NCBI GenBank assembly: GCA_030390025.1
Contig: CM059449.1
Span: 15,066,001-15,130,000, forward strand
DNA: 64,000 nt
Reading direction: 5' to 3'
Source of the DNA: Squalus acanthias
Lineage: Eukaryota
The notes beneath the pieces were generated by a model. The model was not told the DNA's origin. It was given only the letters and a program-made list of their open reading frames with translations, and searched no databases. Shown here one piece after another: positions 12,814 to 59,269 of this stretch (positions are counted from its first letter, which is position 1; the number at the start of each line of letters is the position of its first letter). Both the position numbers and the translations under genes were made by a program.

Positions 12814-13295
12814 ACGAAAATATCAAATACTATATAGGATTATGATGAAATATAAGGAGTTATGTGATGAAACTAGGCCGAGTGAATAGTAACGAGTATG
12901 AACGCTCAACATGTTGGCTTTGATTTTAGCAGCGGCATGAACCAGTTTATTTTCTAGGATAGCATAGGAGACTTATACATGTCATACAAATGTGATAAAT
13001 GTTCACAACTAACACTAAAGAGTCGAATGTTAAAGCATTGGAGATTCCAAGCCCTTGTTGCTGAATTATGTGTGGATAAACCTCACTCACTAAGTTAGAG
13101 GACAAAACATTCGCCTGGAAATTCCAATGGAGGGTTCTCCGATCATCCGCCGTTGAAGATCCCACAGAACCCCCGAGCTTCCGCCCAAGTTACGGCGGGA
13201 GATCGGGACAACTCTGCGGAAATTCCACCAGTTGTCCATCGCGGGTGGGGGCAGGTGCGTCTCATCATTGGGGTGAAATGTGTCGGCTCCTCTTA

Positions 13296-13400
13296 CTACA
13301 CCGAAGCGTACAGCACCGCTTCTCGCTTCACACGGCGCTCAGTTTGATTGCTGTCCTGAACATTCACCGTGGCGTATTGTAACTTGTCATCTCCCTCTCT
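13296..13400 (-). CDS. Gene A terminal exon with two ITIMs (REGDDKLQYATVNVQDSNQTERRVKREAVLYASV*)
   Basis: Acceptor ttcatctcaatAG; LxYxxV and VxYxxV motifs; TAG TAA stops; both motifs retained in the B copy. Confidence 0.8.
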   Translation of the reverse strand, partial: REGDDKLQYATVNVQDSNQTERRVKREAVLYASV

Positions 13401-16400
13401 CTATTGAGATGAAAGTGTTTCAGTGTTGAATAAAATATTGTAAACTGAATATAGCGTAGAGGCTCAAACCCAGCGCACCAGATGTTGTGCAGTTTCAATG
13501 GAATATAATTCAACCCAGTAAACATTCTACATATAATTAGAATATGACTCCACCTATCAAATATTGTTTCGATAAATAGGATAGATCGCGCCGTCCTAAA
13601 TATTCCTGTACTTTTGAATATATTTCAGCGAGTCAACGATTGAACGATTTAAGTAACAAGCAAGGGAAACAGTCGACCTAATTAACACATCATTATAATG
13701 TTAAAACAATGCATTTAGAACAATTCACACTTAATTAATTCAGGAGCAGTGGATCAGTCAGCATCTGGGAAAGACAGATTAACATTTGGGAGTAACTGTT
13801 CAAGAGCACTTTCCATTGAAGGCAAAGTGCCAGCCCACCGGTTACCCTGTGCTTTCTCTTCCAGGAGCTGAGTGACCTACTTTGCATATCCAGCATTTTC
13901 TGTTACGGCTGCAGATTTCCTCCTTATCTCGACATTGTCAAAGTAGGTGTATTTTTACATGTGTATGGCTGGATGCCCCTATTTTGGAGTCTATTTTAAA
14001 GTTCCTGGGTATATCTTGTGCTTTATTTATTCGTTAATGGGATGTGGGCATAGCTGGCAAGGCCGGCATTTATTGCCCATCCGTGGTTGCCCTTGAGAAG
14101 GTGGTGGTGAGCCGCCTTCTTCAACCGTTGCAGTCAACGTACTCCCACATTGTTTTTCATAGCGGCTTTTTACAACTGAGTGACCATTTTAGAGCACAGT
14201 TAAGAGTCAACCACATCGCTGTGGGTCTGGAGTCACATATAGGCCAGACCAGGTAAGGACGGCAGATTTCCTTCCCTAAGGGGCATTAGTGAACATGATG
14301 GGTTTTCACGACAATCCGATAGTTTCATGTCACCATTACTGATACTAGCTTTTTAGCTCAGATTTATTTAATTAAATTTAAATTCCCTAGTTGTTGTGAT
14401 AGGGTTTGAACTCACGTCGCACTGATCATTAGTCCAGGTCTGAAGGATTGCTAGTCCAGTAACATAACCACTATGCTACCAATCCCTATATATGCGTGTG
14501 CATGCACCTGCTGATTTGTGAGTGGCTATATGTATTTGCGAGTGTCTGTGAGAGCGTGTCTTCCTGTGTGTGCAGGTGTTTGAATTCTGGGACTGTCAGG
14601 TTTCATTTCATGCCTTTCCTGGTTGGCTTTCTGTTGAATTATAATGAATATTCTAGCCCCGGCTCTATTCAATTTCGATTTTCAAATTGCCGCGCCTGTG
14701 CGTAAAACAGGCATTTGGGATGGGCCGCACCTGTGCTTTACGCCTGTGTGGCAAGTTGAGAATCTACCCCACATCTCCAAAAAGAAAAGTTGAGGCCATC
14801 CGACCTCGTTTCATCTTTAGATTTTTACATCATGTGAGAGAACATTTTACATGATAATCTACCTGGAAAAGTAAACAGGAAGTCAGTAGGTTTAAAATAA
14901 CAAAAATAGCCCAAGTAATTTTGCTACATACCCGATTTGTTCTTCTGCACTCAGAGCTTTCATAATTCCTCTCTACAGAAAAAAGAAAAAGAGGAAGACT
15001 TGCATTTATATAGCGCCTTTCACCACCTCAGGACGTCCCTAAGCGCTTCACAGCCATTCAAGTACTTTTTGAAGTGTAGTCGCCGTTGTAATGTAGGAAA
15101 CGCGGCAGCCAATTTGCGCACAGCAAGTTCCCACAATCAACAATCTGACAATGGCCAAATAAACTGTTTCAGTGATGTTGATTGAGGGACAAACATTGGC
15201 CGGGACACCGGGGAGAGCTCCCCTGCTCTTCTTCAAAATAGTGCCAAGGTATCGTTTACGTTCAGCTGAGAGAGCAGACGGAGCCTCGGTTTACTGTCTC
15301 ATCTAAAAGACGGTATCTCTGACAGTGCAACGCTCCCTCAGTACTGCACTGAGAGTGTCAGCCTAGCTTGTTGTGCTCATGTCTCTGGAGTGGGAATTGA
15401 AACCCACAGCTTTCAATGTTTCAGAGGCGAGGATGTTACCAACTGAGCCACGGAAAATGACCCTGCCTAATTTAATTTATTTGAACATTGTATACAATAC
15501 AATACAACATATTGTCCCATAGATATAGCGTTGTAATGCACTGTGATATAATGCTATAGGATACAACATAACATGGTAGAAAACAGGAGAACGCAATAAA
15601 ATAAAGTATACAGTAGGATTTACCGTACTGCATAACAATAAAAGGATACAATTAGTATGGTTCAATATATAATACGCTACCATGCAATATAAAACAGCAT
15701 AAAGTTCTTCTGTCCGATATCAACGGTGTTCATGTCAGATTCCTAGGCCCACTATTTTAACTGTTTACTTTAAACTAATGCAAAAAGCAATTTAACATGA
15801 GCGCGCCAAGCCCTCGTACGAGAATAGGTTGATGTCCAGGCTAATCTACTATAATATATGATATATAATACAGCACAACATTGAAACGTACTTTTAAATA
15901 TCATGTAATAATTCATCTCAAAAAAATCAGCGTGTGGTAAGAAAATATCATAAAATATTATTTTATCCATAAACCTTAACACTTCCAATTGACTTTGTGG
16001 CCAATATGTGTAACATGTGTCACTCAATAGCCGTTCGGGAAACAAGAGTTATTGAATCATAGAATCAGACAGCACAGAAGGAGGCCATTCGGCCCAACCT
16101 GCATGTGCCGGCTCTCTGAAAGAGCTATTAATTAATCCCACTACCCCCTGCTCTTTCCCCATAGCCCTGAAAAAGTTCCCTTTTTAAGCATTTATCCAAT
16201 TCCCCTTTGAAAGATATTATTGACTCTGCTTCCACCATCCTTTCAGGCAGCGCATTCCAGATCACAACAACTCACTGAGTAAATAAAAATTCTCCTAATT
16301 TACCCTTCGCATTTTTCTCCCCAGTATCTTAAATCTGTGACCTCTGGTTGCCGACAGAATAATCAGACAGATCAATACTGAACTCTTGGTCAACGGATTA

Positions 16401-19400
16401 TACCTGATAGAACAGAAAATTAACCATATTATCAATTAAAATCAAATTAAATCGGAGCAGTAAGCGTTCGGAGTTTATTAAAAGTGACAGGTTGTTCACG
16501 TTTCATTCTGTCACCCACCTGATTCATGGATCTGTGCGTAGAACGGATCTGGACTGAAGCAAAAGAGGACATCAGAAAATTTAGGCATCCAAAACAATAA
16601 AATACATTAAAGAAAAAGAAAGTGGCTTTCTTTTTTAAAAGTAGTAGATCGATGTAAACAGTTACCTGGTGGGTTGCTGAAGAGCGACTGTGAGGAGAGA
16701 AAGACAAAGACAGAAAAATTAAAGAGCTGAAGTTATTGATTATATCTGCAAGAAGCAACTGAAATAATTGGTATCGAATGAAGTGAATCACATTTTGGGG
16801 GCAATTTTAACTAAACCCGCGGAGAAACGGATGGGATCGGGTGCAACGTTGTGAAGTCAAATGAGACCAATATTGGGCGGGTCTAAACCCGGCGTTCCAG
16901 CCGATCCCCTGCGTTTCCCGCCCGGTGAGTTCCGATCAAATTAGCAGAGAATTTGCCAACCACATGGAATTCAGTAGAGATACAATTAGTGCTGTTACCT
17001 CTCTTACGATGCCGGCTGATAACAACTGTGATTATGACGATGATCAGGAGAGGCACCGCTACCGCTGTATAGACGAGTGGTGGGATCATTGGTGCGGACT
17101 CGCCGTGGCTGCTCTCTCCACCACCTGTGTGTAAATGTAAAGTTTCTTTTGTGAGACAGAGCAGTCAAGAGCAGGGCAATGGTCACATTGAGATTGAGGA
17201 TCAACAAATGTGACACAGATTCCCAATTCCCTTTGACATGCGGAGCTATTTCACACTGGCATACATCAAACTAGGCCACGGATCAAAACGCAAAATGTCA
17301 CCAGTGGGCAACTCGGGTTATTACCAACCTGGAAGTAACACTGGGGAGAATTTTAATGTAGGGACGCTTAATGGGTTGGTGCCAGTTTCCTTTCTTTTAA
17401 ATAGCGGGGGGTGGGGGTGGGGATCGTGTGAGTTCTGTTAACATAGGAACATAGGAACAGGAGGAGGCCATTCATCCCCTCTAGCCTTTTCCACCATTCA
17501 ATGAGATCATGGCTGCTCTGCGACCTAACTCCGTATACCCGCCTTTTGCCCCATATCTCTTAAGACCTTTGGTTAACAAAACTCTGTCAATCTCCGATTT
17601 AAATTTAACAATTGATCTAGCATCAGATGTCGTTTGCGGAAGAGAGTTCCAAACTTTTACCACCCTTTGTGTGTAGAAGTGTTTCCTAATTTCAGTCCTG
17701 AAAGGTCTGGCTCTAATTTCTACACCATGCCCCCTAGTCCTAAACCCCCCAATCAGCTGAAGTAATTTCTCTCTATCTACCATCTCTGTTCCTCTTACTA
17801 TCTCGAGAGTGTCGCTTCTCCCGCCCAGTTTTCTAGAATTCACTAGACCCTGGAGATCCAATAGTTCCAGAGCACGAACGAGAAAATCTTCCCCTCGTAT
17901 TTTCGGGATGCTTAAGACAAAACGAACATCTGGAAATTAGATGTGCCGACACTGGGTGATCAACGTGGATCTTCCGCGGCCCCAATATTTGCATTTTGTT
18001 GGCGCGCAATGTTGTAATTTAAATTTACACACACAACTATATCCGTCAGTACCTCCATTTACAGGATGACAGTGAAATCGAACTTATCATACATGTCTTG
18101 TCCGGTTTATTCCCAATATTGGAACGCGGTGATTTCAAGGCTCACCTGTTGCTCTCATTACGGGGCTCAGTCTTCGCCTCGCACATTGTAACTGGGTTGA
18201 CTACTTATCTATAGTCCTACCTAAAATTGTATACAGCAACTTATTGTAATTAATATCCCCTCCATTTATTTATTTTATAAGATCATTCTCGGGATACGGG
18301 CGACGCTGGCGAGGCGGTCATGTTATTGTCCATCTCTGGTTGACCCCTTGAGAAGGTGGTTTTGGGCCGCCTTATTCTTGAACCGCTGCAGTTCAGTGTG
18401 GTGAAGGTTCTCCCGCAGTGCTGTTAGGGAGGCAGTTCCAGGATTTTGGAAGGAACAGCGATACAAGTTCAAGTCAGGATGGTGTGTGACTTGGCGCCTA
18501 CTGCCCTTGACCTTCTAGGTGGTGGATTCGCGGGTTTGGGAGTTCCAATTGATCTGATGGAGAATTTACCTATACGGCCAGTATTACGCCCTAGAAAAAT
18601 CCCATATGATTGCGAACAATTTCATTGTTAAGAATATCCCCAACAATCCAAACTTACTGTATTGACGCCGTTCCACGGTCACTCTTGTTCCGGGTCCGTC
18701 TGCTGCAGCGAATCCCACGAGCTGCACTTTGCAGAAATAGAACCCAGCATCTTCCGGTTTCAATTGGATTATTCTAATGGACGCGTTTCCCCTCTGGCTG
18801 AAATCCTCTTTACTTGCCCCGAACACCCTGCCTCTGTATTCCGCTGTATTGTTGGAAACTTCATTTCCCTGTTTGGTGCCTCGGTGCCAGGTGTAGCTGC
18901 CGATTGCTGTGGAACCCTCATATCTACAGAGCAGGTCCGCTGTCTGTCCCGCGGGTCTGGTGAGAGCTTGCGGGCTCTGAATTACGGTGATTTTTCCAAC
19001 AGTAACTGCTGTAAGTGGGTAAAACAGACTATTTATAAATATACAGGGCACTCCTTTGCTTTAAAGCACGCCGTGGAAGGGCTGGTTTTAAGCAAATATT
19101 GGTTCGGATGATTTTTGTTAAAGTATTCATGATCTTTAACTTGAGGGAATAAAAACAGAAAACACTGGAAGCGGTCAGCAGGCCAGGCAGCATCTGTGGA
19201 GAGAGGAATAGAGTCAACGTTTAAGGCCGATGACTTTTCGTCAGAACTGGAAAAAGTTGGAGATGTAACAGGTCTTAAGCAAATGTAGGGGCAGGGGAAA
19301 GGGGGGAAGGGAGGAAGAACAAAAGGGAAGGTCTGTGATAGAGTGGAAGGCAGGGGAGATTAAATGACAAAAGGGATGATGGTACAAGTAAAAAGGAGAT

Positions 19401-22400
19401 GGTAATGGGACAAGTAAAGGAACAAAAGATGGGTCTAGAAGAGGATTAAATTGTTAACTTGAGGGATATTGGTGCTGGAACTGGAGCGCCTTTGATTTTT
19501 GGGCGCACTCCTCGGTCAAGTATAGAATGGATCTGGTACAAAGTACCTCTGTCCCGTTCCAAATAATAAGCATTCACTTTAATTTCAGTTCTCCCGATAT
19601 GCTTTCTGTGCTGCCCGCCGCTCTCATTAACACTTTGAGCGAGAGTGTGAAATGGGTAATCTCGAATTAAACGCCTTGCCCGATGTTCTCTTCCATTTGG
19701 GGGCCATTTTAACTTCGGGTGCTAAATAGGTGAGGTCGGGTCGGCTGCCTGAAATTAAAATCGGGGCAGGTGTACAACGGGCGGCTGATCCGATGTCGCC
19801 CGTTTCAGTCGGTCGCACAAAGTCCAAATCACCCCCAGGAAGTGAGGGGAAGTTTAATCTTATTAGTCTGATCAGAATGGAAGTCAGATAGGTGCCAAAC
19901 CCCAGCGACCTTCTCTCTATTAATCAGCGGTGACTGGAGAATATGGGAAATACAAACAGAATATTAATAGTCAAAATAATGAAACGGGATAAATGTTACA
20001 TGTAGCGACATTACAAATTGGATGAAATATTTCCCACTTTGGGTATATCTTGTAAAACCGCCAATACCTCTTTACAAATTGTTTATGATTTTGCTACATC
20101 TACGGATCGGAGAAAATAGTCAATGCATTTGCAACCACGTTCCGCGCAGCAAGCAGCGCAACTCTTGCCCTGTGCTGATAACTAGAGGAATGTTGTATCC
20201 AGTTAAACTGTTAGTAATAATATGAGTTGAACATATCTCTTTCTCTCTCACACACACACGCGATTGGAACCCATTTCTCTCTCTCTCTCTCTTTTCCTAT
20301 TCCTATCCATCACTTCTTGATTTAACTCGTCTACCCTCCCACTATTTCCAACCTTGATGCTGTCCACCCACGTAACTGAAGTTCCTTATCCCCGAACCAT
20401 TCTCGTAAATCTTTTCTGCATCCTCTCTAAGGCCTTCACATCCTTCCTAATGTGTGGTGCCCAGAATTGGGCAAAATACTCCAGTTGAGGCCAACCCAGA
20501 GTTTTATAATGTATCATCATAACTGCCATGCTTTGTACTCTATGCCTCTATTTATAAACCCCAGTATCCCATATTCTTTGTTAACCGCTTTCCCAATCTT
20601 GTGCACATATAACCCCAGGTCTCTCTGTTCAGGCACCCACTTTAGGATCGTAACCTTTAATTTATTTTGCCTCTCCTCGTTCTTCCTCCCGAAATGTATC
20701 ACTTCGCACTTTCCTACGTTAAATTTCATCTGCCACGAGTGGTGAAGCTCCAATTAACGTATCTTCCACTATCATTAATTGATGTTACTGGGTGTCCTTT
20801 TTTGTTCGAATAATTTCGGATCAATGTATCCGTACATGAAATACAGCAATCTGTCAATTAACGTTGTACAATTATTATGAATTGAGCCCAGATAGATCGG
20901 TCACTGCGGGGAAGGATCTCATTTCCAAGGGTCACACTTTAGACGTTAACTAGTTAGCTGTAAGAAGGGAACTTAGGCGGAAACTGTTCCCCTATAGAGT
21001 AAAAGATTTCTGGAACAAGTTACTGGAGACGGCAGTGGGAGTGGGCAGTACAAACAGATTCAAGAGACAACATGTGTGTTTTTAGAAAAAAAGTAGCCTT
21101 GACCTGTCAAACAGGGACAGGTTTTTTTTTGACATAATGATCTCATGTGTCTCACAATTTACAAGCTATTATGAAGAATTTAAATGCTGATTGATCCAGC
21201 AATCATTGAGCTACAAACCGGTATTCAGCTGTCATTACATTGGGTCCTTTTCCCGTTTCTCAACGCAACCTTGGGAAATTGCACTCCATAATCAGATTGA
21301 ACAGAGGTATACATTCGGAACCTTTATGGTGCCAAAATTAGAGGCAATTGTCACTTTATAAAGGTGGATCTGTTGTAGAAGGCGGCTCACCACCACCTTC
21401 TCAATGGTAACTTAGGATGGGCAATAAATGCTGGGCGACGCCCACATATCAGGAACGTATTAAAAATATAGAAGGCATGTTTCCTTTTATATGGTGCGGG
21501 GATAAAACCGCACAGTGCTCTGGTCAGGTGGCATCTTGAGTATTGTGTTTAGTTCTGGTCACTCAGGCTCAAGGGAGACATGTAAGACCCGGAGGAGAAG
21601 TGAACGCTAGCCTGTTCCCTCGTGTTCTAGTGCGAGGTTATGAGAGAAAAAAAAGACTAGAAAAGCTCGGACTCATTAACTTTGTAAAAAGGGACGAACA
21701 TAGCTGCCTTAACAGAGATATGTAAGGTGCCAAGCATGAAAATCAAGGGATAATGCGAAGTACTATTTTGAGATAACCCACACCTTCAGGTGGTGGGTTG
21801 GGCTTTGGGGGAGTAGCCTGAAGCTCGTGTAATCCTATTATTAAAGCACCGCGCCTTGAATAGTCAGATTCTAGTTAGATATATGGCACTTTCAGGATAT
21901 TAATTGTCGACCAATTGTTCTGGATGTACTTTGAAAGTGATATTGACACACGGACACAATTCAGTACACCGAACTGAAATCTCTTAGTACAGCACATGTA
22001 CAGCCATTCCAATGCCAAAATATTGGTAAATTCTTAAAACGAACTCTGATCTTTTTTACTCACTGTCAGTTATTATAAGTTGTGTTCCTGTCCCGCTTGC
22101 TTTCCCAACCGCCACAATTTCCACCTCGCAGTAATAAATATCTGAGTCCATTTTCGTTAAATTGATGATTTCAAGGAAAGCCATTCTTTCGGCAAATAAT
22201 TTCGCCCCTGACTTCGTTATCCGGCTCTGATAGAAACGATCCCGAACCGACACTTCCGTGTTTTGTGAGGCCCGACGCCAAACAACTCCTCCGGCAGTAC
22301 CATTCGCTTCAAAAGTGCAGTTCAGCTGCACCGATCCTCCTTCTGTTGCATTAATGGCATCTGGGGACTGGAACACTCTGATTCCACTCATCAACCCATT

Positions 22401-25337
22401 GTCTGGAGTATAAATGAAACAATGCAATCTGTCAATAGCTACCTACAGATTTACGGACCAGTAGAGAATCATAGAATGGTTACAGCACAGAAGGAGGCCA
22501 TTCGGCCCGTCGAGCCCGTGCCGGCTCTCTGCAAGAGCACTTCAGCTAGTCCCACTCCCCCGCCCTTTCCCCTTAGCCCTGCATTTTTTTCCTTCAGGTA
22601 CTTATCCAACTCCCTTTTGAAAGCCACGATTGAGTCTGCCTCCACCAACCTTTCAGGCAGTGCATTCCAGGTCCTAACCACTCGCTGCGTAAAAAGGTTT
22701 TTCTCATGTCGCCTTTGGTTCTTTTGCCAATCGCCTTAAATCTGTGTCCTCTAGTTCTCAACCCTTCCACCAATGGGAACAGTTTCTCTCTATCTACTCT
22801 GTCTAGACCTCTCATGATTTTGAACACCTCTGTCATATCTCTTCTCAACCTTCTCTGCTCTAAGGAGAACAACTCCGACTTCTCTAGTCTATCCTCGTAA
22901 CTGAAGTTCCTCATCCCTGAATCATTCTCGTAAATATTTTCTTCCCCATCTCTGAGGCCTTCACATCGTTCCTAAAGTGCGGTGCCCAGAATTGGACACA
23001 ATACTCCAGTTGAAGCCGAACCAGTGTTTTGTAAAGGTTCATCATAACTGCCTTGCTTTCGTACTCTATGACTCTATTTATGAAGCCCACTATCCTGTAA
23101 GCTTTGTTCACCGCTTTCTCAACCTGCCCTGCCACCTACAATGATTTGTGCACATATACCCCCAGGTCTCTCTGTTCATGCACCCACTTAATGATCGTAC
23201 CCATTAGTTTATTTTGCCTCTCCTCGTTCTTCCCACCAAAATGTATCACTTCGCACTTTCCTGCGTTGAATGTCATCTGCCACGAGGGGTGAAGCTTAAA
23301 TTAAAGTATCTTCCACTATCACTAACTGATGTTACTGGGTGTCCATTTTTGTTAGAATGAGTTCGGATCAATTTATCCGTACATGAAATACCGCAACCTG
23401 TCAATTAACGTTGTACAATTATTATGAAATGAGCCCAGATAGATCGGTCACTGTGGGGAAGGATGTAATTTCCAAGGGTCATACTTTACACGTTAACTAG
23501 TTAGCAGTAAGAAGGGAAGTCAGGCGGAAACTGTTCGCCTTTCGAGGAAGAGATTTGTGGAACAAGTTGCTGGAGACGGCCGTGGGAGTGGGCAGTACAA
23601 ATAGATTGAAGAGACATACTGGCCCAAAAATTCGTGAGGAAGCCTTCGTGCGAGGGTAAGGCCTCCCCGCGATCTCTCACTCTGCGTTGGCTTTTTCAGT
23701 TCCAGCTCGCACGAACTTGATGTTCTGGACAGCTGCTGTGCTGGGCTTGCGTATCCCACCGGCGTAGTTAATTCGTGCGAGCTGTGGGATCACGTGACTC
23801 AGTTAGAGGCCAATGGAAGCACACCATCTTCCATTCATAACTTTCACATAAGTGCTGTGAAAGTTATGAATACTATAGCCCCCCAAAAGAACCGCTAAAC
23901 CTCAATTAAATTAAAAAAACATCACATTAATAAAATAAGTATAGTTAAATAAATTAACCATTTTAAATAAAAAATTAAATCTTTGAAAAAATTTAAAATC
24001 TTTTAAAAAGTTATAAAAATAAACTTACCTGTCTTTAAAGTCTCTAAAAAAGATATACCTGTTAAAAAAAATTCAAAATAATACTTAATTCACTACTTAC
24101 CTTGTTAAAAGTGGGTCTTACTCCTCCTTTTTTATGTGTAGAATCTTCCGTACTTACCTGCGCGTTGAAACCACTAATTGCACAGCGTGCGCGCAGCCTG
24201 TAGCGCGCACGCGGTTCACCTAGGACCCGCCCCCTTTTCCATTCACCAAGTGCCGGTTTTTAGCGCATGCGCAGTGCATGCAGAAAACCGGCAATTGGAG
24301 ACAGAATAGGCGAGAGTACGCAGTGCGGACTCTCGCGTAGCGGCACAAATTTTTGGGCCAATGTGTGTTTCTGGAGAAAGAAGCATTGATCTGTCAATCA
24401 GGGACTGGGTATTTGTGGACACAATGATCTCTTGTGTCCCAGAATTTACAAGCTATTATGAAGAATTTAAAATGCTGATTGATCCATCAATCATTGAGCT
24501 ACAAACCGGTATTCAGCTGTCATTACATTGGGTCCTTTTCCAGTTTCTCAACGCAACTTTGGGAAATTAAAGTCCATAATCGATTCAACAGCTTTTTACA
24601 TTCAGAACCTTTATGGTGCAAAAATTAGAGGCAATTGTCACTTTATAAAGGCGGTTCTGCTGTATTTCCACGCACTTGGTTTTCTTTGCAAAACTATTGA
24701 CATAATATAATCACCACTTCCCAACGCAGTTCTATTTCACCGTCCTACTAGGGGAAGATTTCACTTCTGTCATCTTTAATCATTTAAGACGGAAACCTGT
24801 CCTTTATAGTCTGTTAATTGTAAGTATGAAAACTTTGGAAATGTGTTGAATATGAATCGTTTGCTAATGGAATAAATTGTGTCGAACGCAAAGACGTTGA
24901 ATTGTCGAGTAGAAGGTATAATGTCAGATAATTCCACGTGTAACACAGTCGGTTAGGAGTCCGTGAGGTAATTTATTTCCATAAGTACATTTTAGTAGGC
25001 CCTATTAATATGTTAATTTTTAATGCAAATTCACAGCATCTGCATGGAGGAGAACGTTAATGTGTATAATATATATATGTAAAGTTCCCCGAAAGATAAA
25101 ATACCGTTGAAATGGTGGATTCAACGCAAAGTAACACAGCGAAATAAAATAATTTATTTTACACACTGTAACTTCGTTATATATTAGGTCTGCATAAGGA
25201 AACAACCTGCCCAACCAAGTAACCGATAGTCTTAATAAATATAGAATTAAAATGTGAACATCAGAAGATAGCGACTCACCGACATGCAAAAGTATGGTCA
25301 GTAAATTGAAGAACATCCACATGTGAATAGTTTGCAT
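13296..25337 (-). CDS. Gene A: NKp30/NCR3-like two-V-domain Ig-superfamily inhibitory receptor (8 exons, 358 aa predicted)
   Basis: Exons 25337-25280, 22402-22064, 19008-18658, 17124-16999, 16687-16666, 16553-16519, 14972-14932 and 13400-13296 all have AG/GT boundaries and compatible phases. They sum to 1077 nt with no internal stop. Domain order: leader, two V domains, TM, tail with LQYATV and VLYASV. Confidence 0.75.
14932..14972 (-). CDS. Gene A cytoplasmic exon 3 (ERNYESSECRRTNR)
   Basis: ttttctgtAG...CGG|GTATGT; phase 1-0 bridges exon 2 to the last exon. The paralogue in B differs in length by an in-frame 3-nt indel. Confidence 0.6.
14994..15453 (-). mobile_element. Deu-type SINE (paralogous copy 36943-37405, plus)
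   Basis: Same family as 27431-27899. Confidence 0.75.
16519..16553 (-). CDS. Gene A cytoplasmic exon 2 (SPDPFYAQIHES)
   Basis: cttttgcttcAG...AG|GTGGGT; 35 nt; phase 2-1 fits its neighbours; carries a YxxI motif. Confidence 0.7.
16666..16687 (-). CDS. Gene A cytoplasmic micro-exon 1 (VALQQPT)
   Basis: Long pyrimidine tract plus cacAG, 22 nt, AG|GTAAC; identical exon sequence in gene C (58826-58805). Confidence 0.7.
16999..17124 (-). CDS. Gene A stalk/transmembrane exon
   Basis: GGESSHGESAPMIPPLVYTAVAVPLLIIVIITVVISRHRKR: hydrophobic span without a charged residue, then a basic stop-transfer. acacAG...G|GTAAC; 126 nt; conserved in gene C. Confidence 0.85.
18658..19008 (-). CDS. Gene A V2 exon, NKp30-like VJ-type Ig V domain
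   Basis: AIGSYTWHR / GNEVSNNTAEYRGRV / DAGFYFCKVQLVG...GPGTRVTVE closely parallel human NKp30 AIGSVTWFR / GKEVRNGTPEFRGRL / DASIYVCRVEVLG...GNGTRLVVE (recalled from memory). Tandem acceptor ttacAGCAG, donor GTAAGT; 351 nt, phase 1-1. Confidence 0.92.
19149..19453 (-). mobile_element. Penelope-like terminal fragment with 13-bp TSD
   Basis: TTAACTTGAGGGA at 19136-19148 and 19454-19466; hammerhead core present but GAAA is mutated to TAAA. Confidence 0.7.
20370..21378. repeat. Direct duplication of gene A intron-1 segment (partner about 22900-24665)
   Basis: Shared CR1/unique junction (tcatctgccacgag.ggtgaagct) followed by about 640 nt of collinear non-CR1 sequence. Confidence 0.85.
22064..22402 (-). 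CDS. Gene A V1 exon, NKp30-like VJ-type Ig V domain
   Basis: Motifs QLNC...VVWRR...SRI...DSDIYYCEVEIV...GTGTQLII; acceptor tactccAG, donor GTGAGT; 339 nt, phase 1-1. Confidence 0.9.
22465..23280 (-). mobile_element. CR1 3' fragment
   Basis: LEYCVQFWAP, LEQRRLR, WNALP; (ATTCT)-type tail. Confidence 0.85.
23620..24360. mobile_element. MITE / non-autonomous DNA transposon (possibly PIF/Harbinger-like)
   Basis: 17-bp TIRs TGGCCCAAAAATTCGTG / CACAAATTTTTGGGCCA (1 mismatch); absent from the duplicate copy near 21070. Confidence 0.75.
25280..25337 (-). CDS. Gene A exon 1, signal peptide MQTIHMWMFFNLLTILLHV
   Basis: ATG, hydrophobic stretch and phase-1 donor G|GTGAGT; joins in frame to DNGLMSG-IRVFQSP of the V1 exon. 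Confidence 0.75.
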
Positions 25338-26164
25338 TTTGATTCTTGCTCCGCAGGACACTACGAGCTACCATCTGACCCGCAGCGTCCCAAAGTGCTG
25401 TTAAGTGTAACAAACGTCCCACAACAGACGCTGAATTATATGACGAAACCTTCTGGTGGTTTAACACCACACAGAGGAACTCTGTTCACTACGCACGTTT
25501 TTCAATTGTAGTTGGATACGTCATATTTTAAGAATATTAAAGATAGAAGCACTACTTTAACATTACACAAGCGGTACATTGAAACAAAAGAATAACGCCT
25601 CGCAGTTCAGTTTCATCCTTCACTAATTTCAGTGGGTGTTTACGAACCCGGGGGATTGAAACTCATCTTGCACCTCTCAAACAATTACAAACTCATTAGA
25701 ATGAAGTCAGAGGGCGCAGAGTTTGTAAATGAGAACCGGCGATAGTACTCGGGTTTGCTTTAAATGGGTAGTGCCTGGCAATTGTCTGAAACATGAACAT
25801 GAGTTGGCCACATGTCACGGAATGATGCTGAGCCCAGTTGTGTAAATCCAACAGCATGCCTTTCACGTTCAGAGCGCTTTCGACGGGAACTACATGATCA
25901 GTGCTTTTTGCTACCTATTCTAGCCCAACCTTTTTTTAAAAAAACGTGTACTTTTAAGAGTTATCTGGCCCAAGAAACTGTAATGCTGCAGTAGGACTAC
26001 CAGGGCCTGAACTGGGATAAATCAACACTGTAGTTACAGAAAGGGGAGAGCACCTGGAAAAAGAACAGCAGAGTCTAAGCTCAACTTCCTTTGGGATCGG
26101 AAAACGGGCAGTGGCGGATCGGCAGCCTGTGACAAACCCCACCCGATTTACCTTTTCATATCAA

Positions 26165-26760
26165 TGGAAGTTATGATGAACCTTTATAAAACACTAGTTC
26201 AGCCACAACTGGAGTATTGTGTCCAATTCTGGGCACTGTACCGAAGGATGGATGTAAAGGCTTTAGAGAGGGTGCAGAAAAGATTAACGAGAATTGTTCC
26301 AGGGATGAGGAACTTCAGTTACGTTGATAGACTGGAGAAGCTGGGGTTGATCTCTTTGGAGCAGAGAAGATTGAGAGGAGATTTGATAGAGGTGTTCAAA
26401 ATCATGAGGGGTCTAGACAGTGTGATAGAGAGAAACTGTTCCCATTGGCAGAAGGGTCGTGAACCAGAGGACACAGATTTAAGGTGATTGGCACAAGAAC
26501 CAAAGGCGACATGAGGAAAAACATTTTACACAGCGAATGGTTAGGATCTGGAATGCACTGCCTGAAATGGTGGTGGAGGCAGATTCAATCGTGGCTTTGA
26601 AAAGGGAATTAGATAAGTACCTGAAGGAAAAAAATGGCTGGGCTACGGGGAAAGGGCGGGGGAGTGGGACTTGCTGAAGTTCTCTTGCAGAGAAAGCCGG
26701 CACGGGCTCGATGGGCCGAATGGCCTCCTTCTGTGCTGTAACCATTCTATGATTCTATGA
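26165..26760 (+). mobile_element. CR1 3' fragment
   Basis: LYKTLV.PQLEYCVQFW...RRLRGDLIEVFK; tail ATTCTATG repeats. Confidence 0.85.
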
Positions 26761-29295: not shown

Positions 29296-30603
29296 AGAGC
29301 GAGAGAGAGAGAGACAGAACCATGTGCGAGAGAGGTAACTGCGGTTGTATATACAGCTTGCAATTCATTTTTTTTCCATTCCCTCACATCCGGACTCTGA
29401 CTCAGGTTCACTCTCCCACTGCATTACTCAAATATTCCTGTCTGTACACGATCTGAATTTCTTTTCTGAAATGATATCACCGCCGACAGGGAGAATGAAT
29501 TGGGCTGCAGTTACCTGGGCATTCGTTATGTTCTCCGGTAAGCTTATTTCTGACACATCAGGTCCATTCAAGCAGATTTTCAACTTGCCGCCTGAGCGTA
29601 AAGCTGGCGTTGCGGTGCGGCCGCCTGTTATTGAAACGGACTGATTTTAATTTCCATTATTTCATACTGACTGTAATGAGATATTGTATGTCTTAATTAG
29701 ATATTAAAAACCCATAGCGATGTCCTCCTATCTATTTGTTTTCTTATTCATATGTGTATCTGGTTAAATCTTATTCCGATATCCCATATTTGCTGATCAC
29801 AGCATCAGATTGTGGATTTAACACATTTTATATTCATGACAATCTCACCTTCAATTTAAAAAACATCAGGTTTGTGCAGACATTCTCATAGACGCGAGAT
29901 TAACCATCTTAATTTCTCAACGCCGTGGTAATGAATTATGTTCTGGTAATATAATCAATCTCGCAGTTAACCAGGTCTCGCCTTAGGGTAACGCTTTTGA
30001 GGTTGCTTATTTTGAATTGAGGCATTTAAGTGAAGGGCCCATGGCCCATGGCGTAGGACAGCATCAAGGTTGGAAATAGTGGGAGGGAAGACGAGTTAAA
30101 TCAAGAAGTGATGGATAGGAATAGGAAAAGAGAGAGAGAGAGAGAGAAATGGGTTCCAATCGTGCGTGTGTGTGTGAGACAGAAAGAGAGACTGAGGTAG
30201 ACAGAGAGAGATAGAGAGAGCTAACCATGAGAGACGGATCAGCTCTCGGGTTACGAGGTTTATTGTATCTGGTCCAGGAGAGCACAATGTATGTTGCTCC
30301 CTGAAGTACATATTGCCCTAGTACTCTGCCTGATAGGGTGGTGGATACAGATTCAATAGTAGTCTTCAAATTGGAATTGGACAAATACTTGAAGGAGAAA
30401 AATATTGCAGGGATGGGGGAAAGACTGGGGGAGTGGGACTAACTGGATCGCTCTTCGAAAGAGCTGGCGCAGACTCGATGAGCCGAAAGGCCTCCTTCTC
30501 TGCTGTACTATTCTATGATGTGGAGATGCCGGTGTTGGACTGGGGTGGACAAATGTGAGAGGTCGCACAACACCAGGTTATAGTCCAACAGATTTATTTG
30601 AAA

Positions 30604-30640
30604 TCACAAGCTTTCGGAGCGCTGCTCCTTCGTCAGGTGA
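30604..30640 (-). ncRNA. Minimal hammerhead ribozyme motif
   Basis: Minus strand TCAC-CTGACGA-A-GGAGC agc GCTCC-GAAA-GC-TT-GTGA. Confidence 0.6.
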
Positions 30641-31147
30641 AGTGAAGAGATGCATATAAGCACAGCATATATAGTCAGAGAACACTGCCAGATGATTACA
30701 GTTAATCTTTCAAACTGCCCTTTATCACATCGTCGAGCAGAAATTGATAGCCAAGTTCTGCACCCATGAGGACGGCCTCAACCGGGATCTTGGGTTCATG
30801 TCACACTACATGTAACCCCACCCTACGTAGAGTCATCCAGACTCGAGTCGTCATTGGCTTGTTCTCTTTACACAGATGCGGCCGGATCTGCTGTGATTTC
30901 CAGCTAAAAAAGTTTTTTGTTTTCCATCCAGACCCCAGCATCTGCCACGTTTGACCCCTTGTGAACCCACCTCATTGTCTTTGATGTCATGTTTTCCTGA
31001 CTGACCTGTTTGGACACGATCCAGAGCTATTATTGCCGTGATTATCTCTCTGCCGAGGTGTGATAAAGGGCAGTTAGAATGATTAACTGTAATCATCTGG
31101 CAGTGTTTTCAGACTATATATGCTGCGCCTATATGCATCTCTTCACT

Positions 31148-31184
31148 TCACCTGACGAAGGAGCAGTGCTCCGAAAGCTTGTGA
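31148..31184 (+). ncRNA. Minimal hammerhead ribozyme motif
   Basis: TCAC-CTGACGA-A-GGAGC agt GCTCC-GAAA-GC-TT-GTGA: conserved core, stem II and stem I. Confidence 0.6.
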
Positions 31185-32378
31185 TTTCAAATAAAGCTGT
31201 TGGACTATAACCTGGTACTATTCTATTATTCTATTATATTACATCTAACAAAAATTTCAATATTCTCTATCAACAGCAGTCCTTGGAGTGAATATTTGCA
31301 GTGCTGGCTGTGTTCAAATAAACACCCGTTTCCAGGGGGCATGACTTTTTTTTTGTTCAATTCATATTATTTCTCGTAATTTAACTGGATACAATCTTTC
31401 TCTAGTTACCAGCATAGGGCAAGAGTTGCGCTGCTTGCTGCGCGTAACCAGGTCGCAAATGCATTGATTATTTTCTCTGATTTCGTAGTTGTAGCAAAAT
31501 CATAAACAATTTTTAAAGTGTTATTGGTGGTTTTACAAGATATACCCAAAGTGGGAAATCTTTCATCCAATTAGTAATGGCGCTACATGTAACAAGCTGA
31601 GTACATTTAGTCCGTTTCATTATTTTGACTGTTAAAATTCTGTTTGAATTTTACATATTCTCCCGTCGCCACTGATTAACAGTGCGAAGGTCGCTGTTAC
31701 TACCTATCTGACTTCCAATCTAATCAAATTAATAAGATTAAACTTCTCCTCACTTGCTGGGGGTGATTTTGAATTTGTCCGACCGACTGAAACGGGCGAC
31801 ATCGGATCAGCCGCCTGTTTAAAACCTGCCCCGATTTTAATATCAGGCAGCCGACCCGACCTCGCCCATTCAGCACCCAAAGTTAAAATGATCCCCAAAT
31901 GGAAGCGATCATCGGGCAAGGCGTTTAATTCGTGATTGCCCATTTCACACTCTCGCTCAAAGTGTCAATGAGAGCGGCGGGCAGCACAGAAAGCATATCG
32001 GGAGAACTGAAATTAAAGTGAATGCTTATTATTTGGAACGGGACAGAGGTACTTTGTACCAGATCCATTCTATACTTGACCTAGGAGTACACCTAAAAAC
32101 CAAAGGCGCTCCAGTTCCAGCACCAATATCCCTCTAGTTAACCATTTAAACCTCTTCTAGACCCATCTTTTGTTTCTTTACTTGTCCCATTACCATCTCC
32201 TTTTTACTTGTATCACCATCCCTTTTGTCATTCGATCTCTCCTGCCATCCACTCTATCACAGACCTTCCCTTTTGTTCTTTTCTCCCCTTCCCCCGTTTC
32301 CCTGCCACGACACTTGCTTAAGACCTGGTACATCTGCAAACTTTTCCAGTTCTGACGAAAGGTCATGGACCTGAAATG

Positions 32379-33659
32379 TGTAGGCTTCGCAAAATCACCC
32401 AGAAACTCGAACAGAACCCTAAGTGAAGTGATTTGAGGTAAAAACCTCAGTTTTGGACATTTTAAAAGATCAGGGAAGAAAACCCCCTGAGGAAAATGAC
32501 TTTTTGAATCTTACTGTTAGGAAAGACACCTTTCACAGACACAGACAGGCTGCAAAGGGGCGTGGCCAGGCAGTGGACAGCTTTGGGTATTGGGGCCCAA
32601 TCAAACTGTCTGGGAATGTGTTTACACTGCATTCCTACCAAGGAGGAAGAGACAAACCCAAAGCCTCACACACACATCGAAATATGAATAAATCCAAGAC
32701 CTCTTTTGAAATTCCCAGTCCCAAACAGGATACCAGAAGCCTGAAATCAATAAAACATTTAGTACCCCGATTTACTTCATCAAAAAACAATCAACCAGGT
32801 ATCCACAGGACAGATTTACAAGCCCGCCAAAAACCTAGGACAATAGGGACAAGATTTGGTGCGTAGATAAAGGCCTTGCCTGAATGGGGAACATCGGAAG
32901 CCATCGGGACATGTTTAACACCAAGTTAAAGCCATCGAAACTGACAAGCCCGCCAAAACTAAGACAATGGAATAAACAGGGCTCATTTGAAATCTAAAGG
33001 AATCCGATTTAGTAAGGGGTTTTGGCCGCGAAAAGGACAAAGAGGCTGACAATATAATTGGAGGCCTAAACCCCAAGACTCTCTCTCTCTGGACTCTCTG
33101 ACAACGCTCTCAACGCTCGCACAGCTCTCTCTCAGCTATGCTCCAGCAAGACACCACAAGCCACGAGGAGGAGGAGGAAAGAAGGCCAACAACTTCACAA
33201 ACAGACCAACACACAAGAAGAAACCAGAGCGACTGCCTCAGTGACCATCGGACACCACGTGGCAACAAGGGCCTTACGAAACCTTTTACCCAAAAGACTC
33301 TAAACCCTAACTCTCAACTGTCAAGGATTCATTTGGTGAGCATTATCCCTGAACTCCTGAAACCAAAACCTAGCTAGATAGTGGGATTTTTGGGAGGGAT
33401 AAGGTTTTTTTTGTATATTGTATTTCACCCTCGCCTGCACCGTGTGTTTCCCAATCTGTGTTTAAGTATTAAGTGTGTTTTAAGTGTGTTACATTTTTAT
33501 GTTAATAAAGTCAAAATTCTTTCATCAGGGCCTGTTGTCTACTGCATCTTTGTTCACAACCCCTAAATAAATCCAAAGTCTAGGAACCAGGGGCGTGAGA
33601 GCGATTCGAACCACTCACTGAGTAAGAGGTGAAGGTTGACCCCACTAACACCCCCTAAA
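32379..33659 (+). mobile_element. Solo LTR (ERV/Gypsy-type, about 1.28 kb)
   Basis: Termini TGTAGG...CCTAAA (CCTACA with one change); 4-bp TSD AATG/AACG; TATA-like motif near 33052 and AATAAA near 33504; absent from the paralogous site near 19215. Confidence 0.75.
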
Positions 33660-57962: not shown

Positions 57963-58658
57963 AAAGAATATAAAGCACAGAAACAGGCCATTCGGCCCAA
58001 CTAGTCGGTGCTGGTGTTTATACTCCACACGAGTCTTCTCCCACTCCATCTACCTCATCTCAGCCTTTCAGCATATCTTCCTATTCCCCTTTCTGTCATA
58101 TACTCGCCTAGTATCCTTTTAAAGGCATCTAAGCTGTTTCCCTCAAACACTTCCTCTGGTAGCGAGTTCGACATTCTATACACACTGAGTAAAGAAATTT
58201 CCCCTTATATCCCTATTGGATTATTTAGTAACCATCTTGTATTTATGGTCCTTAATAGTGCTACAATTGTGGTCTGTGCGCTAGAGAGCCAGTTTTACAG
58301 ATCCTTGCTGTTACCCTTTAATTCCTGACAGACAGCCAAAGGTGTGCACCTTGGGTGACAACAGGATCGATTGGAGTTTCCTAGGAGGAACCATGCCCCC
58401 AGCAAGAGAAATGTGATAAAAATTAAAATGGATTGTGTCTACAAACCAAAGGCGAACAAGCAAGCAGCAAAGTATTACCAAAACAAAAGCAAAATACTGC
58501 GGATGCTGGAAATCTGAAATAAAAACAGAAGCTGCTGGAAATACACAGCAGGTCAGGCAGCATCTGCAGAGAAAGAAACAGAGTTAACGTTTCAGGCAGA
58601 TGGACCTTACTCAGAAGTTCTCAGTGACAGGTTGTGCACATTTCTTTCTGACACCCAC

Positions 58659-58826
58659 CTTTTTCATGGATCTCTGCGCAGAGCGGATCTGGACTGAAGC
58701 AAAAGAGGACAACAGAAAATTAGGACATCCAAAATAATAAAATACATTAAAGAAAAAGAAAGTGGCTTTCTTTAAAACAAAACTAGATCAATGTAAACAG
58801 TCACCTGGTGGGTTGCTGAAGAGCGA
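58659..58826 (-). CDS. Gene C cytoplasmic exons 1 (58826-58805) and 2 (58693-58659, PDPLCAEIHEK)
   Basis: Direct homologues of the A exons with intact splice sites; the Tyr of FYAQI is replaced by Cys. Confidence 0.6.
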
Positions 58827-59137
58827 CTGTGAGGAGAGAAAGACAAAGACAGAAAAATTAAAGAGTTGAATTTATTGATTATATCTGCAAGAAGGAACAG
58901 AAATAATTGTTATCGAATGAATTGAATCATATTTTGGGGGCGATTTTAACCAAACCCGCGGAGAAACGGACGTGATCGGGGGAAACGATTTGAAGTCAAA
59001 TGAGAGCAATATTGGGCGTGTCTAAACCCGGCGTTCCACCCGATCCCGTGCGTTTCCCGCCCGGTGAGTTCGGATCAAATTACCAGAGAATTTGCCAACA
59101 ACATTGAATTCAGTAGAGGTACAATTAGTGCTGTTAC

Positions 59138-59269
59138 CTCTCTTAGGACGCCGGCTGATAACAACTATGATTATGATGATGATGATGATCAGGAGAGGAA
59201 CCACTATCGTTAATAAGACGAGTGGTAGGATCATTGGTGCGGACTTGCCGTGGCTGCTCTCTCCACCAC
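59138..59269 (-). CDS. Gene C stalk/transmembrane exon
   Basis: GGESSHGKSAPMILPLVLLTIVVPLLIIIIIIIIVVISRRPKR; same splice sites as in A; 132 nt. Confidence 0.75.

What the first reader, a model, noticed from the sequence alone, without database searches (positions are those of the whole stretch)
13296..25337. Intact two-V-domain NKp30-like receptor with an uncharged TM and tandem ITIMs: a candidate inhibitory NK-type receptor family in a shark
Seen: eight exons splice in frame to leader-V1-V2-TM-tail, and the tail carries FYAQI, LQYATV and VLYASV. The ORF track does not assemble this gene. Established: mammalian NKp30 is a single-V activating receptor with a TM arginine that binds B7-H6; ITIM-bearing NKp30-related V genes (XMIV) are known in the Xenopus MHC. 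Inference: this cluster is a cartilaginous-fish inhibitory branch of the NKp30/XMIV lineage that signals through SHP-1/2. No charged-TM activating partner was found in this window.
Basis: partly seen in the sequence, partly recalled or inferred. Interest (0 to 1): 0.85.

Follow-up and report, generated by a model that had tools for sequence, protein, structure and literature searches.

The report
Shark NKp30-like receptor gene with ITIMs
This is an intact-looking gene of the already described shark NKp30 (NCR3) receptor family, with two antibody-like domains and a tail of the inhibitory type; it is interesting but not new in kind, and no RNA evidence shows that it is used.

Summary
On the minus strand, eight exons with GT/AG borders (25337-13296) chain in frame: leader, V1, V2, stalk plus uncharged TM, three micro-exons, and a last exon carrying LQYATV and VLYASV. 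I checked the frame by phase arithmetic only and never joined the exons.

V2, the TM exon, exon 6 and the last exon are collinear with predicted receptors of horn shark, catshark and bamboo shark that have the same dual-ITIM tail. V2 sits in a 98%-supported clade with a published nurse-shark NCR3. NKp30 is the best solved-structure match for both V domains, but V1's place in the tree is unresolved.

FYAQI is not a canonical ITIM and its tyrosine is not conserved.

The V2-TM-tail cassette has no leader of its own. Its two copies in the window are pseudogenes, and one of them keeps the canonical leader. So the two-V product depends on splicing that nothing here proves: the three listed runs covered only repeats.

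ITIM-tailed and charged-TM relatives already exist in public shark annotations, and first-stage notes report many similar genes elsewhere in this genome (unchecked). Verdict: a new member of a known kind, and the inhibitory mechanism is inferred.

The parts
25280..25337 (-). Exon 1: ATG plus hydrophobic leader (MQTIHMWMFFNLLTILLHV), ends in phase 1, donor GTGAGT
22064..22402 (-). Exon 2: V1, a V-set domain with Cys/Trp/Tyr-x-Cys hallmarks and the J-like GTGTQLIIT; phase 1-1; divergent (at most 39% identity to any relative seen)
18658..19008 (-). Exon 3: V2, a V-set domain with the J-like GPGTRVTV; phase 1-1; 64-68% identical to nurse shark NCR3 QTT61898 and horn shark XP_067865395
16999..17124 (-). 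Exon 4: short stalk, uncharged transmembrane helix (about 17015-17089) and basic stop-transfer RHRKR; donor GTAACA
16666..16687 (-). Exon 5: 22-nt micro-exon (ALQQPT), identical in gene C, collinear with QQP of the horn shark protein
16519..16553 (-). Exon 6: 35-nt micro-exon (PDPFYAQIHES); holds FYAQI, which is not a canonical ITIM; the Tyr is not conserved
14932..14972 (-). Exon 7 (predicted): 41-nt micro-exon (RNYESSECRRTNR) that restores the frame; polypyrimidine-AG and GTATGT borders; the paralogue keeps both borders and has an in-frame 3-nt deletion
13296..13400 (-). Exon 8: last coding exon with ITIM 1 LQYATV (13365-13382), ITIM 2 VLYASV (13299-13316) and stop TAG (13296-13298)
12946..12951 (-). 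First AATAAA downstream of the stop (345 nt); a possible polyadenylation signal

Best explanation
The locus is an intact-looking member of the shark NCR3 (NKp30-like) multigene family. Its V2-stalk-TM-tail part is the counterpart of a single-V, ITIM-tailed receptor type found in horn shark, catshark, bamboo shark and nurse shark. In this gene that cassette has no leader of its own and lies behind another leader and a divergent V exon. All four 5' exons are phase 1, so the predicted main product is leader-V1-V2-TM-tail.

Proposed mechanism (inferred, not shown): the V domains bind a cell-surface ligand. A Src-family kinase then phosphorylates the two tail tyrosines (LQYATV and VLYASV, 22 residues apart). 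The phosphorylated pair recruits a tandem-SH2 phosphatase (SHP-1, SHP-2 or SHP-2L), which damps signals from activating receptors. The uncharged TM means the receptor does not pair with ITAM adaptors.
For: - Canonical GT/AG borders and an in-frame phase chain.
- V-set Pfam hits for both V exons.
- NKp30 is the top solved-structure match. By sequence: V2 9e-15 against 4.8e-10 for the next family; V1 2.1e-8 against 7.2e-6. By fold, for V1: four NKp30 chains at E 5.9e-11 to 7.4e-10 and TM 0.79-0.81, with the next hit at 3.8e-9.
- V2 lies in a 9-row clade (SH-aLRT 98) with nurse shark NCR3 QTT61898, two bamboo shark proteins and the horn shark and catshark proteins. This clade sits inside a 97-row group that also holds horse and frog NCR3. 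Cattle SIRP lies in a different group.
- Exons 4, 6 and 8 are collinear with the relatives (0/200 shuffles reach the observed score).
- Both tyrosines and both +3 hydrophobic residues are kept in 3 of 3 relatives that have this tail part: VQYATL/VLYATV, MQYAQL/VLYATV and VQYAEI/MVYAKV.
- Exon 8 is the best-kept exon between paralogues (94.8% against about 90% overall).
- There is no V2-type leader and no TM-like exon between V1 and V2.
- The SH2 binding sites of SHP-1/SHP-2/SHP-2L are reported as conserved down to sharks, and the N-SH2 preference (I/L/V)x-pY-(T/V/A)x(I/V/L) fits both motifs (passages of PMC12151841).
Against: - No transcript evidence: none of the 3 listed runs held the exons.
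- No protein of this species was found in the protein searches.
- The cassette's two sister copies in the window are pseudogenes: a shared TAA in the V exon, and loss of the TM region in B. An open frame at about 10% divergence is therefore weak proof of function.
- The substitution pattern on A's side of the V2 exon is 6 synonymous to 8 non-synonymous, not clearly constrained.
- Exons 5 and 7 are not individually significant.
- ITIM 2 ends exactly at the C-terminus, so residues beyond +3 are missing.
- V1 cannot be placed by phylogeny.
Confidence: 0.55

Rival explanations
1. Unused mosaic. The V2-TM-tail cassette is one more leaderless segmental copy, like the dead copies B and C, and merely happens to be still open. 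The leader and V1 are an orphan or belong to another transcript. No two-V receptor is made.
For: - B and C carry the same stop in the V exon, so this cassette has been copied in a non-functional state.
- Gene C also has the cassette right behind a foreign V exon, and there it is dead.
- A/B homology stops inside intron 1 at a repeat, and A lacks the B-type leader.
- There is no clear excess of synonymous change.
- No RNA evidence.
Against: - All eight exons are open with canonical borders.
- V1 has no TM exon of its own before V2.
- Phases match.
- Exons 5 and 8 are better kept than the introns.
- Multi-V relatives, including pairs of unlike V domains, exist in other sharks (P0155, P0008, P0003, P0001).
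Confidence: 0.25
2. The locus is expressed, but mainly as single-V isoforms. V1 or V2 is skipped, which is possible because both are symmetric phase 1-1 exons. This gives leader-V2-TM-ITIM or leader-V1-TM-ITIM.
For: - Phase symmetry.
- The orthologous receptor type is single-V in horn shark, nurse shark and bamboo shark.
- The horn shark gene has annotated isoforms with and without the ITIM tail.
Against: Nothing in the sequence favours skipping. Both V exons have strong acceptors and GTGAGT or GTAAGT donors.
Confidence: 0.15
3. It is a SIRP-family gene rather than an NKp30-family gene, as NCBI's automatic names for the horn shark and other relatives suggest ('SIRP beta-like', 'tyrosine-protein phosphatase non-receptor type substrate 1-like').
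For: - Automatic names of relatives.
- SIRP V domains are among the V2 hits at about 2e-8.
- An ITIM-bearing tail, as in SIRP alpha.
- The AU test does not reject V1 grouping with the SIRP clade (p 0.70).
Against: - NKp30 outranks SIRP by six orders of magnitude for V2 and is first for V1 by sequence and by fold.
- V2 groups with published shark NCR3 and apart from cattle SIRP.
- No C1-set exons lie between V2 and the TM.
Confidence: 0.05

Closest known systems
Shark NCR3 family (nurse shark sequences QTT61898 and QTT61904; Kinlein et al. 2021, Immunogenetics 73:333, seen here only as a citation and through its deposited proteins)
   Same: - V2 is 64% identical to QTT61898 and shares a 98%-supported clade with it.
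- The stalk/TM exon scores best against it (88, 0/200 shuffles), and the exon 6 part aligns (NPLYADMHD).
- Uncharged TM in both.
   Different: - The deposited QTT61898 protein stops after the exon-6 part and shows no ITIM.
- The gene here has a second, divergent V domain in front and a foreign leader.
- QTT61904 has a Lys in its TM.
- I could not read what the paper says about ITIMs or two-V forms.
Horn shark XP_067865395/XP_067865393 (Heterodontus francisci), catshark XP_038671257 first half, bamboo shark GCC38504
   Same: - Same V type (53-68% identity).
- Same order of uncharged TM, QQP, PDP.., SSE.R.TN and a dual-ITIM last part ending VLYATVK.
   Different: - These are single-V genes with their own leader of the M.W.AV.W type. 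Gene B of the window has that leader (29495-29537) and gene A does not.
- A's stop comes one codon earlier.
Mammalian NKp30 / NCR3 (PDB 3NOI, 3PV6, 6YJP)
   Same: - Best solved-structure match of both V domains, at 29-30% identity for V1.
- VJ-type V domain encoded in one exon.
   Different: - One V domain, not two.
- A TM arginine that pairs with CD3-zeta/FcR-gamma, giving an activating receptor (passage of PMC5371597). Here the TM is uncharged and the tail has ITIMs.
- Binding to B7-H6 was not tested.
Amphibian NCR3-like and XMIV-type genes (e.g. Rhinatrema XP_029439644)
   Same: The caecilian protein named NCR3 has a tail with TVYADL and AVYAVL, so ITIM-tailed NCR3 relatives exist outside sharks.
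   Different: - Different clade.
- XMIV itself is recalled from memory only. The search for NKp30 + XMIV found 0 papers.
SIRP alpha; PD-1; teleost NITRs (as functional analogues)
   Same: A V-set ectodomain, an uncharged TM and tandem tyrosine motifs that recruit SHP phosphatases. The YAT(V/I) core resembles the PD-1 ITSM consensus (T/V)EYATI quoted in PMC12151841.
   Different: - SIRP has V-C1-C1.
- PD-1 has one V domain and ITIM + ITSM.
- The NITR comparison is from memory and was not tested.

Membership tests
NKp30 / NCR3 family | V-set Ig domain of VJ type in a single exon (J-like GxGT..V motif at its end) | tested here: met
   Pfam V-set for V1 (2.6e-8) and V2 (1.3e-13). GTGTQLIIT and GPGTRVTV lie inside the V exons. 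Columns G103, G105 and T106 are nearly invariant in a 45-sequence alignment.
NKp30 / NCR3 family | Closest to NKp30 among V domains of known structure | tested here: met
   Sequence: V2 9e-15 against 4.8e-10 for the next family; V1 2.1e-8 against 7.2e-6. Fold: for V1, ranks 1-4 are NKp30. The model's alignment was mostly NCR3-family sequences, which may bias the fold result.
NKp30 / NCR3 family | Groups with named NCR3 sequences in a tree, apart from SIRP | tested here: inconclusive
   V2: met, in a 9-row clade at SH-aLRT 98 with nurse shark NCR3 and 97 in the 118-row tree. V1: long branch and no supported set; AU p is 0.65 with shark NCR3 and 0.70 with SIRP. All rows came from a search seeded with V2, and no Ig, TCR or CD28 V domains were included.
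NKp30 / NCR3 family | Single V domain ectodomain | tested here: not met
   The model has two V exons in series. Multi-V relatives exist in other sharks.
NKp30 / NCR3 family (mammalian, activating type) | Positively charged TM residue for ITAM adaptors | tested here: not met
   The TM MIPPLVYTAVAVPLLIIVIITVVIS has no charged residue. Charged-TM relatives exist in other sharks (P0008 R, P0155 K, P0031 K, P0043 R).
NKp30 / NCR3 family | Binds B7-H6; linked to the MHC | not testable with these tools
   The window holds only NCR3-like exons and repeats. An unchecked first-stage note places an 'MHC class III region' 1.55 Mb away.
ITIM-bearing inhibitory receptors | (S/I/V/L)xYxx(I/V/L) in the cytoplasmic tail | tested here: met
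   LQYATV and VLYASV in exon 8. FYAQI fails, with Pro at -2.
ITIM-bearing inhibitory receptors | Motifs conserved in orthologues; two motifs spaced for a tandem-SH2 phosphatase | tested here: met
   Both Tyr and both +3 residues are kept in 3 of 3 relatives with this tail part. The -2 residue is Met in one motif each of catshark and bamboo shark. Tyr-Tyr spacing is 22 residues.
ITIM-bearing inhibitory receptors | Tyrosine phosphorylation, SHP-1/2 recruitment, inhibition of activation | not testable with these tools
   Inference only. Conservation of the SHP SH2 sites in sharks is taken from passages of PMC12151841.
SIRP family | V domain followed by C1-set domains; V closest to SIRP | tested here: not met
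   No further Ig exon lies between V2 and the TM. SIRP scores about 2e-8 against 9e-15 for NKp30.

The most novel reading that the evidence does not exclude
The leaderless V-TM-ITIM cassette of the NCR3 family behaves as a copy-and-paste module. Because it begins with a phase-1 V exon, any copy that lands in the leader intron or behind the V exon of another family member is spliced in. This would create receptors with two unlike V domains, as in gene A here, and by repetition the 3- to 5-V relatives seen in other sharks. On this reading gene A is a working inhibitory receptor whose two V domains come from different NCR3 subtypes and could read two ligands or one composite ligand.
Probability: 0.3. 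Interest if true: 0.5.

Novelty: new member of a known kind. Interest (0 to 1): 0.33.

Why it matters
NKp30 is the one NK-cell receptor that can be traced from sharks to humans. If this gene is expressed, it adds an inhibitory, two-V form to that family. It also gives a concrete example of how exon-phase compatibility lets duplicated V-TM-tail cassettes build new receptor architectures.

Together with charged-TM relatives in other sharks, it supports the view that paired activating and inhibitory signalling on one ectodomain type was already in place in cartilaginous fish.

The gain is modest. The family is published, ITIM-tailed orthologues are already in public annotations, and the scan's own notes report many such genes in this genome.

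Tried and rejected
RNA evidence. The look-up of sequencing runs listed 3 runs, all guessed to be RNA, each holding 0.01-0.02 of the sampled words. Read laying on 13250-19100 put contigs only on interspersed repeats. One 158-letter contig at 18880-19037 had 13 differences and ran across the V2 acceptor into the intron, so it is an unspliced paralogue or DNA. No junction was seen, and absence is not shown.

Own-species annotation. Three word-index protein searches found no protein of this species: the V2 ORF gave 2 hits among 57 candidates, the V1 ORF gave none among 7 candidates, and the horn shark protein gave 3 hits among 787 candidates. The length filter (0.55-1.75x) would hide a protein of about 358 aa in the first two searches.

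Horn shark locus.

Key papers. Kinlein et al. 2021 (PMC8273117) and Flajnik et al. 2012 (PMC3709836) are not held. What I say about their content is recalled or comes from citing lists. Searches for NKp30+shark+NCR3 gave 16 papers, the phrase 'shark NCR3 family genes' gave 4, NKp30+XMIV gave 0, NKp30+ITIM+cartilaginous gave 4, and NCR3/nurse shark/ITIM (at least 2 of the 3 terms) gave 169, of which 10 were listed. None of them discussed ITIM-tailed shark NCR3. Supplements were not asked for.

Phylogeny of V1. The careful 118-row tree did not finish, so the quick tree was used. The AU test on 118 rows did not finish in two further runs. A 57-row LG+G4 version finished and was inconclusive.

Ideas considered and rejected:
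- A V2-type leader between V1 and V2: none found. The only candidate, MLPGLLTASSVF, has a GTTTTT donor and no likeness to the family leader.
- A TM exon for V1 between V1 and V2: one hydrophobic stretch at 19936-19992 lies in a 23-codon open stretch between two stop codons, without an acceptor or donor.
- FYAQI as a third ITIM.
- The ITIM pair as significant on its own.
- Polarising substitutions on the A lineage: the three copies cannot be rooted.


Full report
1. What is there. The window is mostly repeats. One LINE is shown by reverse-transcriptase and endonuclease Pfam hits at 44055-46631. The rest of interest is a small cluster of V-set exons. A tblastn search with the two V exons of the finding finds five V exons in the window:
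- 22064-22402 (-)
- 18658-19008 (-)
- 33830-34291 (+)
- 60751-61158 (-)
- 62292-62651 (-)
No N run lies inside 13296-25337.

2. The gene model. Reading the minus strand and fixing the borders by script gives eight exons:

| Exon | Coordinates | Notes |
|---|---|---|
| 1 | 25337-25280 | ATG, hydrophobic leader, donor GTGAGT |
| 2 | 22402-22064 | V1 |
| 3 | 19008-18658 | V2 |
| 4 | 17124-16999 | stalk, TM, RHRKR |
| 5 | 16687-16666 | 22 nt |
| 6 | 16553-16519 | 35 nt |
| 7 | 14972-14932 | 41 nt |
| 8 | 13400-13296 | ends TAG |

Every acceptor is AG behind a pyrimidine-rich stretch, and every donor is GT (GTGAGT, GTGAGT, GTAAGT, GTAACA, GTAACT, GTGGGT, GTATGT). The lengths add to 1077 = 3 x 359 and the phases run 1,1,1,1,2,1,0. 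The frame check is arithmetic and exon-wise. The first AATAAA lies 345 nt after the stop.

3. Is it more than chance? The ITIM pair alone is not. The window holds 10 pairs of ITIM-pattern motifs 15-35 residues apart in open frames, against a mean of 4.6 in 20 shuffles. The evidence lies in homology. A full HMMER scan with the V2 exon gave 439 proteins at E <= 1e-3 and 10 at E <= 1e-30. The best single-V hits are:
- horn shark XP_067865395 (68% identity)
- nurse shark NCR3 QTT61898 (64%)
- bamboo shark GCC38504 (59%)
- the first half of catshark XP_038671257 (53%)

The exon translations were aligned one at a time to these four proteins:
- Exon 4 scores above all 200 shuffles against all four.
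- Exon 8 does so against the three that have this part.
- Exon 6 does so against horn shark and nurse shark.
- Exons 5 and 7 are too short to be significant (31/200 and 36/200 shuffles reach the score against horn shark).
- On the horn shark protein all five pieces fall in order: 156-190, 199-201, 204-213, 219-226, 237-267.
- One exon-7 match, to the bamboo shark protein at residues 9-16, is out of order, and I count it as spurious.

The paralogue on the plus strand keeps both borders of exon 7 and differs by an in-frame 3-nt deletion.

4. What the domains are. Both V exons hit Pfam V-set. They carry the Cys-Trp-(Tyr-x-Cys) hallmarks and a J-like GxGT motif inside the exon.

- PDB by sequence. 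NKp30 is first for V2 (9e-15; the next family, pIgR, is at 4.8e-10 and SIRP at about 2e-8). It is also first for V1 (2.1e-8; next is TCR alpha at 7.2e-6).
- PDB by fold. An AlphaFold model of V1 has pLDDT 93.5. It was built on 45 sequences, mostly family members, which may bias it. Its four best structural matches are NKp30 chains (E 5.9e-11 to 7.4e-10, TM 0.79-0.81; next is a VHH at 3.8e-9).
- 169-row tree of V domains. I dropped hit proteins longer than 700 aa and domain matches that covered fewer than 85 positions of the query. V2 lies in a 9-row clade (SH-aLRT 98) with the nurse shark, bamboo shark, horn shark and catshark proteins. That clade sits in a 43-row shark group. The shark group joins a 54-row group with horse and frog NCR3 (support 84). 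Cattle SIRP lies in a separate 35-row group.
- V1. It sits on a long branch (0.92) outside these groups with no supported partner. AU tests on a 57-row set reject neither 'V1 with the shark NCR3 family' (p 0.65) nor 'V1 with the SIRP clade' (p 0.70).
- Limits. All rows came from a search seeded with V2, so Ig, TCR and CD28-type V domains were not in the tree.

5. Tail and TM. The TM (MIPPLVYTAVAVPLLIIVIITVVIS) has no charged residue.

- ITIMs. LQYATV and VLYASV fit (S/I/V/L)xYxx(I/V/L), with 22 residues between the tyrosines. The relatives read VQYATL/VLYATV (horn shark), MQYAQL/VLYATV (catshark) and VQYAEI/MVYAKV (bamboo shark). Both tyrosines and both +3 residues are kept in 3 of 3, with Met at -2 in two of the six motifs.
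- FYAQI. It has Pro at -2. The tyrosine is absent in horn shark (PINAEI), catshark (RLCAEV) and gene C (LCAEI). It is present in nurse shark (PLYADM) and gene B (PLYSVI). It should not be counted as an ITIM.
- Stop codon. A's stop is AAG->TAG relative to gene B and the orthologues, so ITIM 2 ends at the C-terminus.

6. How the locus arose, and why the two-V claim is only a prediction. The cassette from about 20365 down past the last exon is about 90% identical to a plus-strand copy, gene B (30056-39407). From about 19000 to 16483 it is also about 90% identical to a minus-strand copy, gene C (58623-61158).

- Gene B has the family's canonical leader (MNWAAVTWAFVMFS|GTAAGC at 29495-29537; compare MDWAAVTWAIAIFS in horn shark). 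It also has a TAA in its V exon and lacks the 517 bp that hold the TM exon and most of exon 5.
- Gene C's V2-type exon carries the same TAA. It lies 1.1 kb behind another intact V exon (62292-62651), which groups with the horn shark 'SIRP beta-2-like' proteins.
- Gene A has no B-type leader between V1 and V2 and no credible TM exon there. Its V2-TM-tail cassette can therefore be expressed only through A's own leader, with or without V1.

The same data carry a warning. The cassette has been copied while dead, and one dead copy also sits behind a foreign V exon. The arrangement in A could therefore be an accident that is still open. In the V2 exon the changes on A's side are 6 synonymous to 8 non-synonymous, against a random expectation of 24% synonymous. 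This is not significant, and the three copies cannot be rooted.

7. Mechanism. Shown: the architecture, the motifs and their conservation. Inferred: the receptor binds a ligand through its V domains. Src-family kinases then phosphorylate the two tail tyrosines, and the phosphorylated pair engages the tandem SH2 domains of SHP-1, SHP-2 or SHP-2L. Passages of PMC12151841 state two relevant points. The SH2 binding residues of these phosphatases are conserved throughout jawed vertebrates, sharks included. The N-SH2 domain of SHP-2 prefers (I/L/V)x-pY-(T/V/A)x(I/V/L), which both motifs fit.

The uncharged TM argues against pairing with ITAM adaptors, which mammalian NKp30 does through a TM arginine (passage of PMC5371597).

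I picked 32 shark-family proteins from the tree; several are isoforms of one gene. Of these, 22 have a predicted TM. Eleven of the 22 have at least one ITIM pattern after it, one of them doubtful (P0003, juxtamembrane). Four have Arg or Lys inside the TM (P0008, P0155, P0031 = nurse shark NCR3 QTT61904, P0043). Both signalling designs therefore exist in the family, though not in this window.

8. Novelty. The shark NCR3 family was published in 2021. I saw only the citation and the deposited proteins, because the paper itself is not held. ITIM-tailed orthologues of the V2 cassette are already in RefSeq/GenBank for horn shark, catshark and bamboo shark. A caecilian protein named NCR3 also has two ITIM patterns. 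The scan's own first-stage notes list at least eight further ITIM-bearing NKp30-like genes on the same genome piece, from 1.5 Mb before to 89 kb beyond this window, as well as forms said to be activating. I did not check these. What may be particular to this gene is the union of two unlike V domains by cassette capture, and that rests on unverified splicing. I rate it a new member of a known kind.

9. Limits.
- No RNA evidence.
- The horn shark locus could not be fetched.
- The two key papers and all supplements were unseen.
- V1 is unplaced.
- MHC linkage, the ligand and phosphatase binding are not testable here.

Noticed in passing
window 29495-39116 (+): Gene B is a single-V paralogue of the V2-TM-ITIM cassette with the canonical family leader (29495-29537). 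It is a pseudogene: a TAA in the V exon (33873-34223) and loss of the 517 bp that hold the TM exon and most of exon 5. Its tail exons (about 35843-35877, 37430-37467 and 39009-39116) are still open and end in ...VLYASVK.
   Followed up: partly
window 58623-62651 (-): Gene C has an intact V exon of another subtype (62292-62651, closest to the horn shark 'SIRP beta-2-like' proteins). It is followed by a dead V2-type exon (60825-61158, TAA; its 5' end runs into the N run 61160-61662). Then come an uncharged TM exon with a 6-nt insertion (59138-59269), exon 5 (58805-58826) and exon 6 with Tyr->Cys (58659-58693). No exon-8 homologue was found for it in the window.
   Followed up: partly
window 18860-18862 versus the same codon in genes B and C: B and C share a TAA where A has GAA and orthologues have E/D. 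Yet neutral distances over about 1.8 kb put A closest to C (92.1% against 89.9% and 89.3%; odd-one-out sites A 62, B 110, C 71). Possible causes are a parallel mutation, a reversion or gene conversion in A, or unequal rates. Unresolved.
   Followed up: partly
window 20362-21377 and 22887-24664: A segment of about 1 kb in the V1-V2 intron recurs at 86-88% identity in the leader-V1 intron, there split by about 745 bp. Part of it is a repeat family with further copies in the window (for example 26164-26332 and 63464-63586).
   Followed up: no
window 44055-46631 (+): LINE-type element: open frames with Pfam endonuclease (Exo_endo_phos_2, 7e-9) and reverse transcriptase (RVT_1, 2.4e-14) hits.
   Followed up: partly
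database proteins P0151 versus P0004/P0152 (horn shark): One annotated isoform of the horn shark orthologue inserts an extra piece (DHINLYDVIPPSPPPVLQRQ) after the exon-6 part. The rest of the tail is then read in another frame and both ITIMs are lost. Alternative splicing may therefore switch the inhibitory tail on and off in this receptor type.
   Followed up: no
window 13250-19100, runs X1-X3: The three small runs labelled as possible RNA put very deep contig coverage on interspersed repeats only (for example 14034-14425, 15014-15405, 17366-17757 and 18346-18541). They look like repeat-rich low-coverage data rather than a transcriptome of this locus.
   Followed up: no
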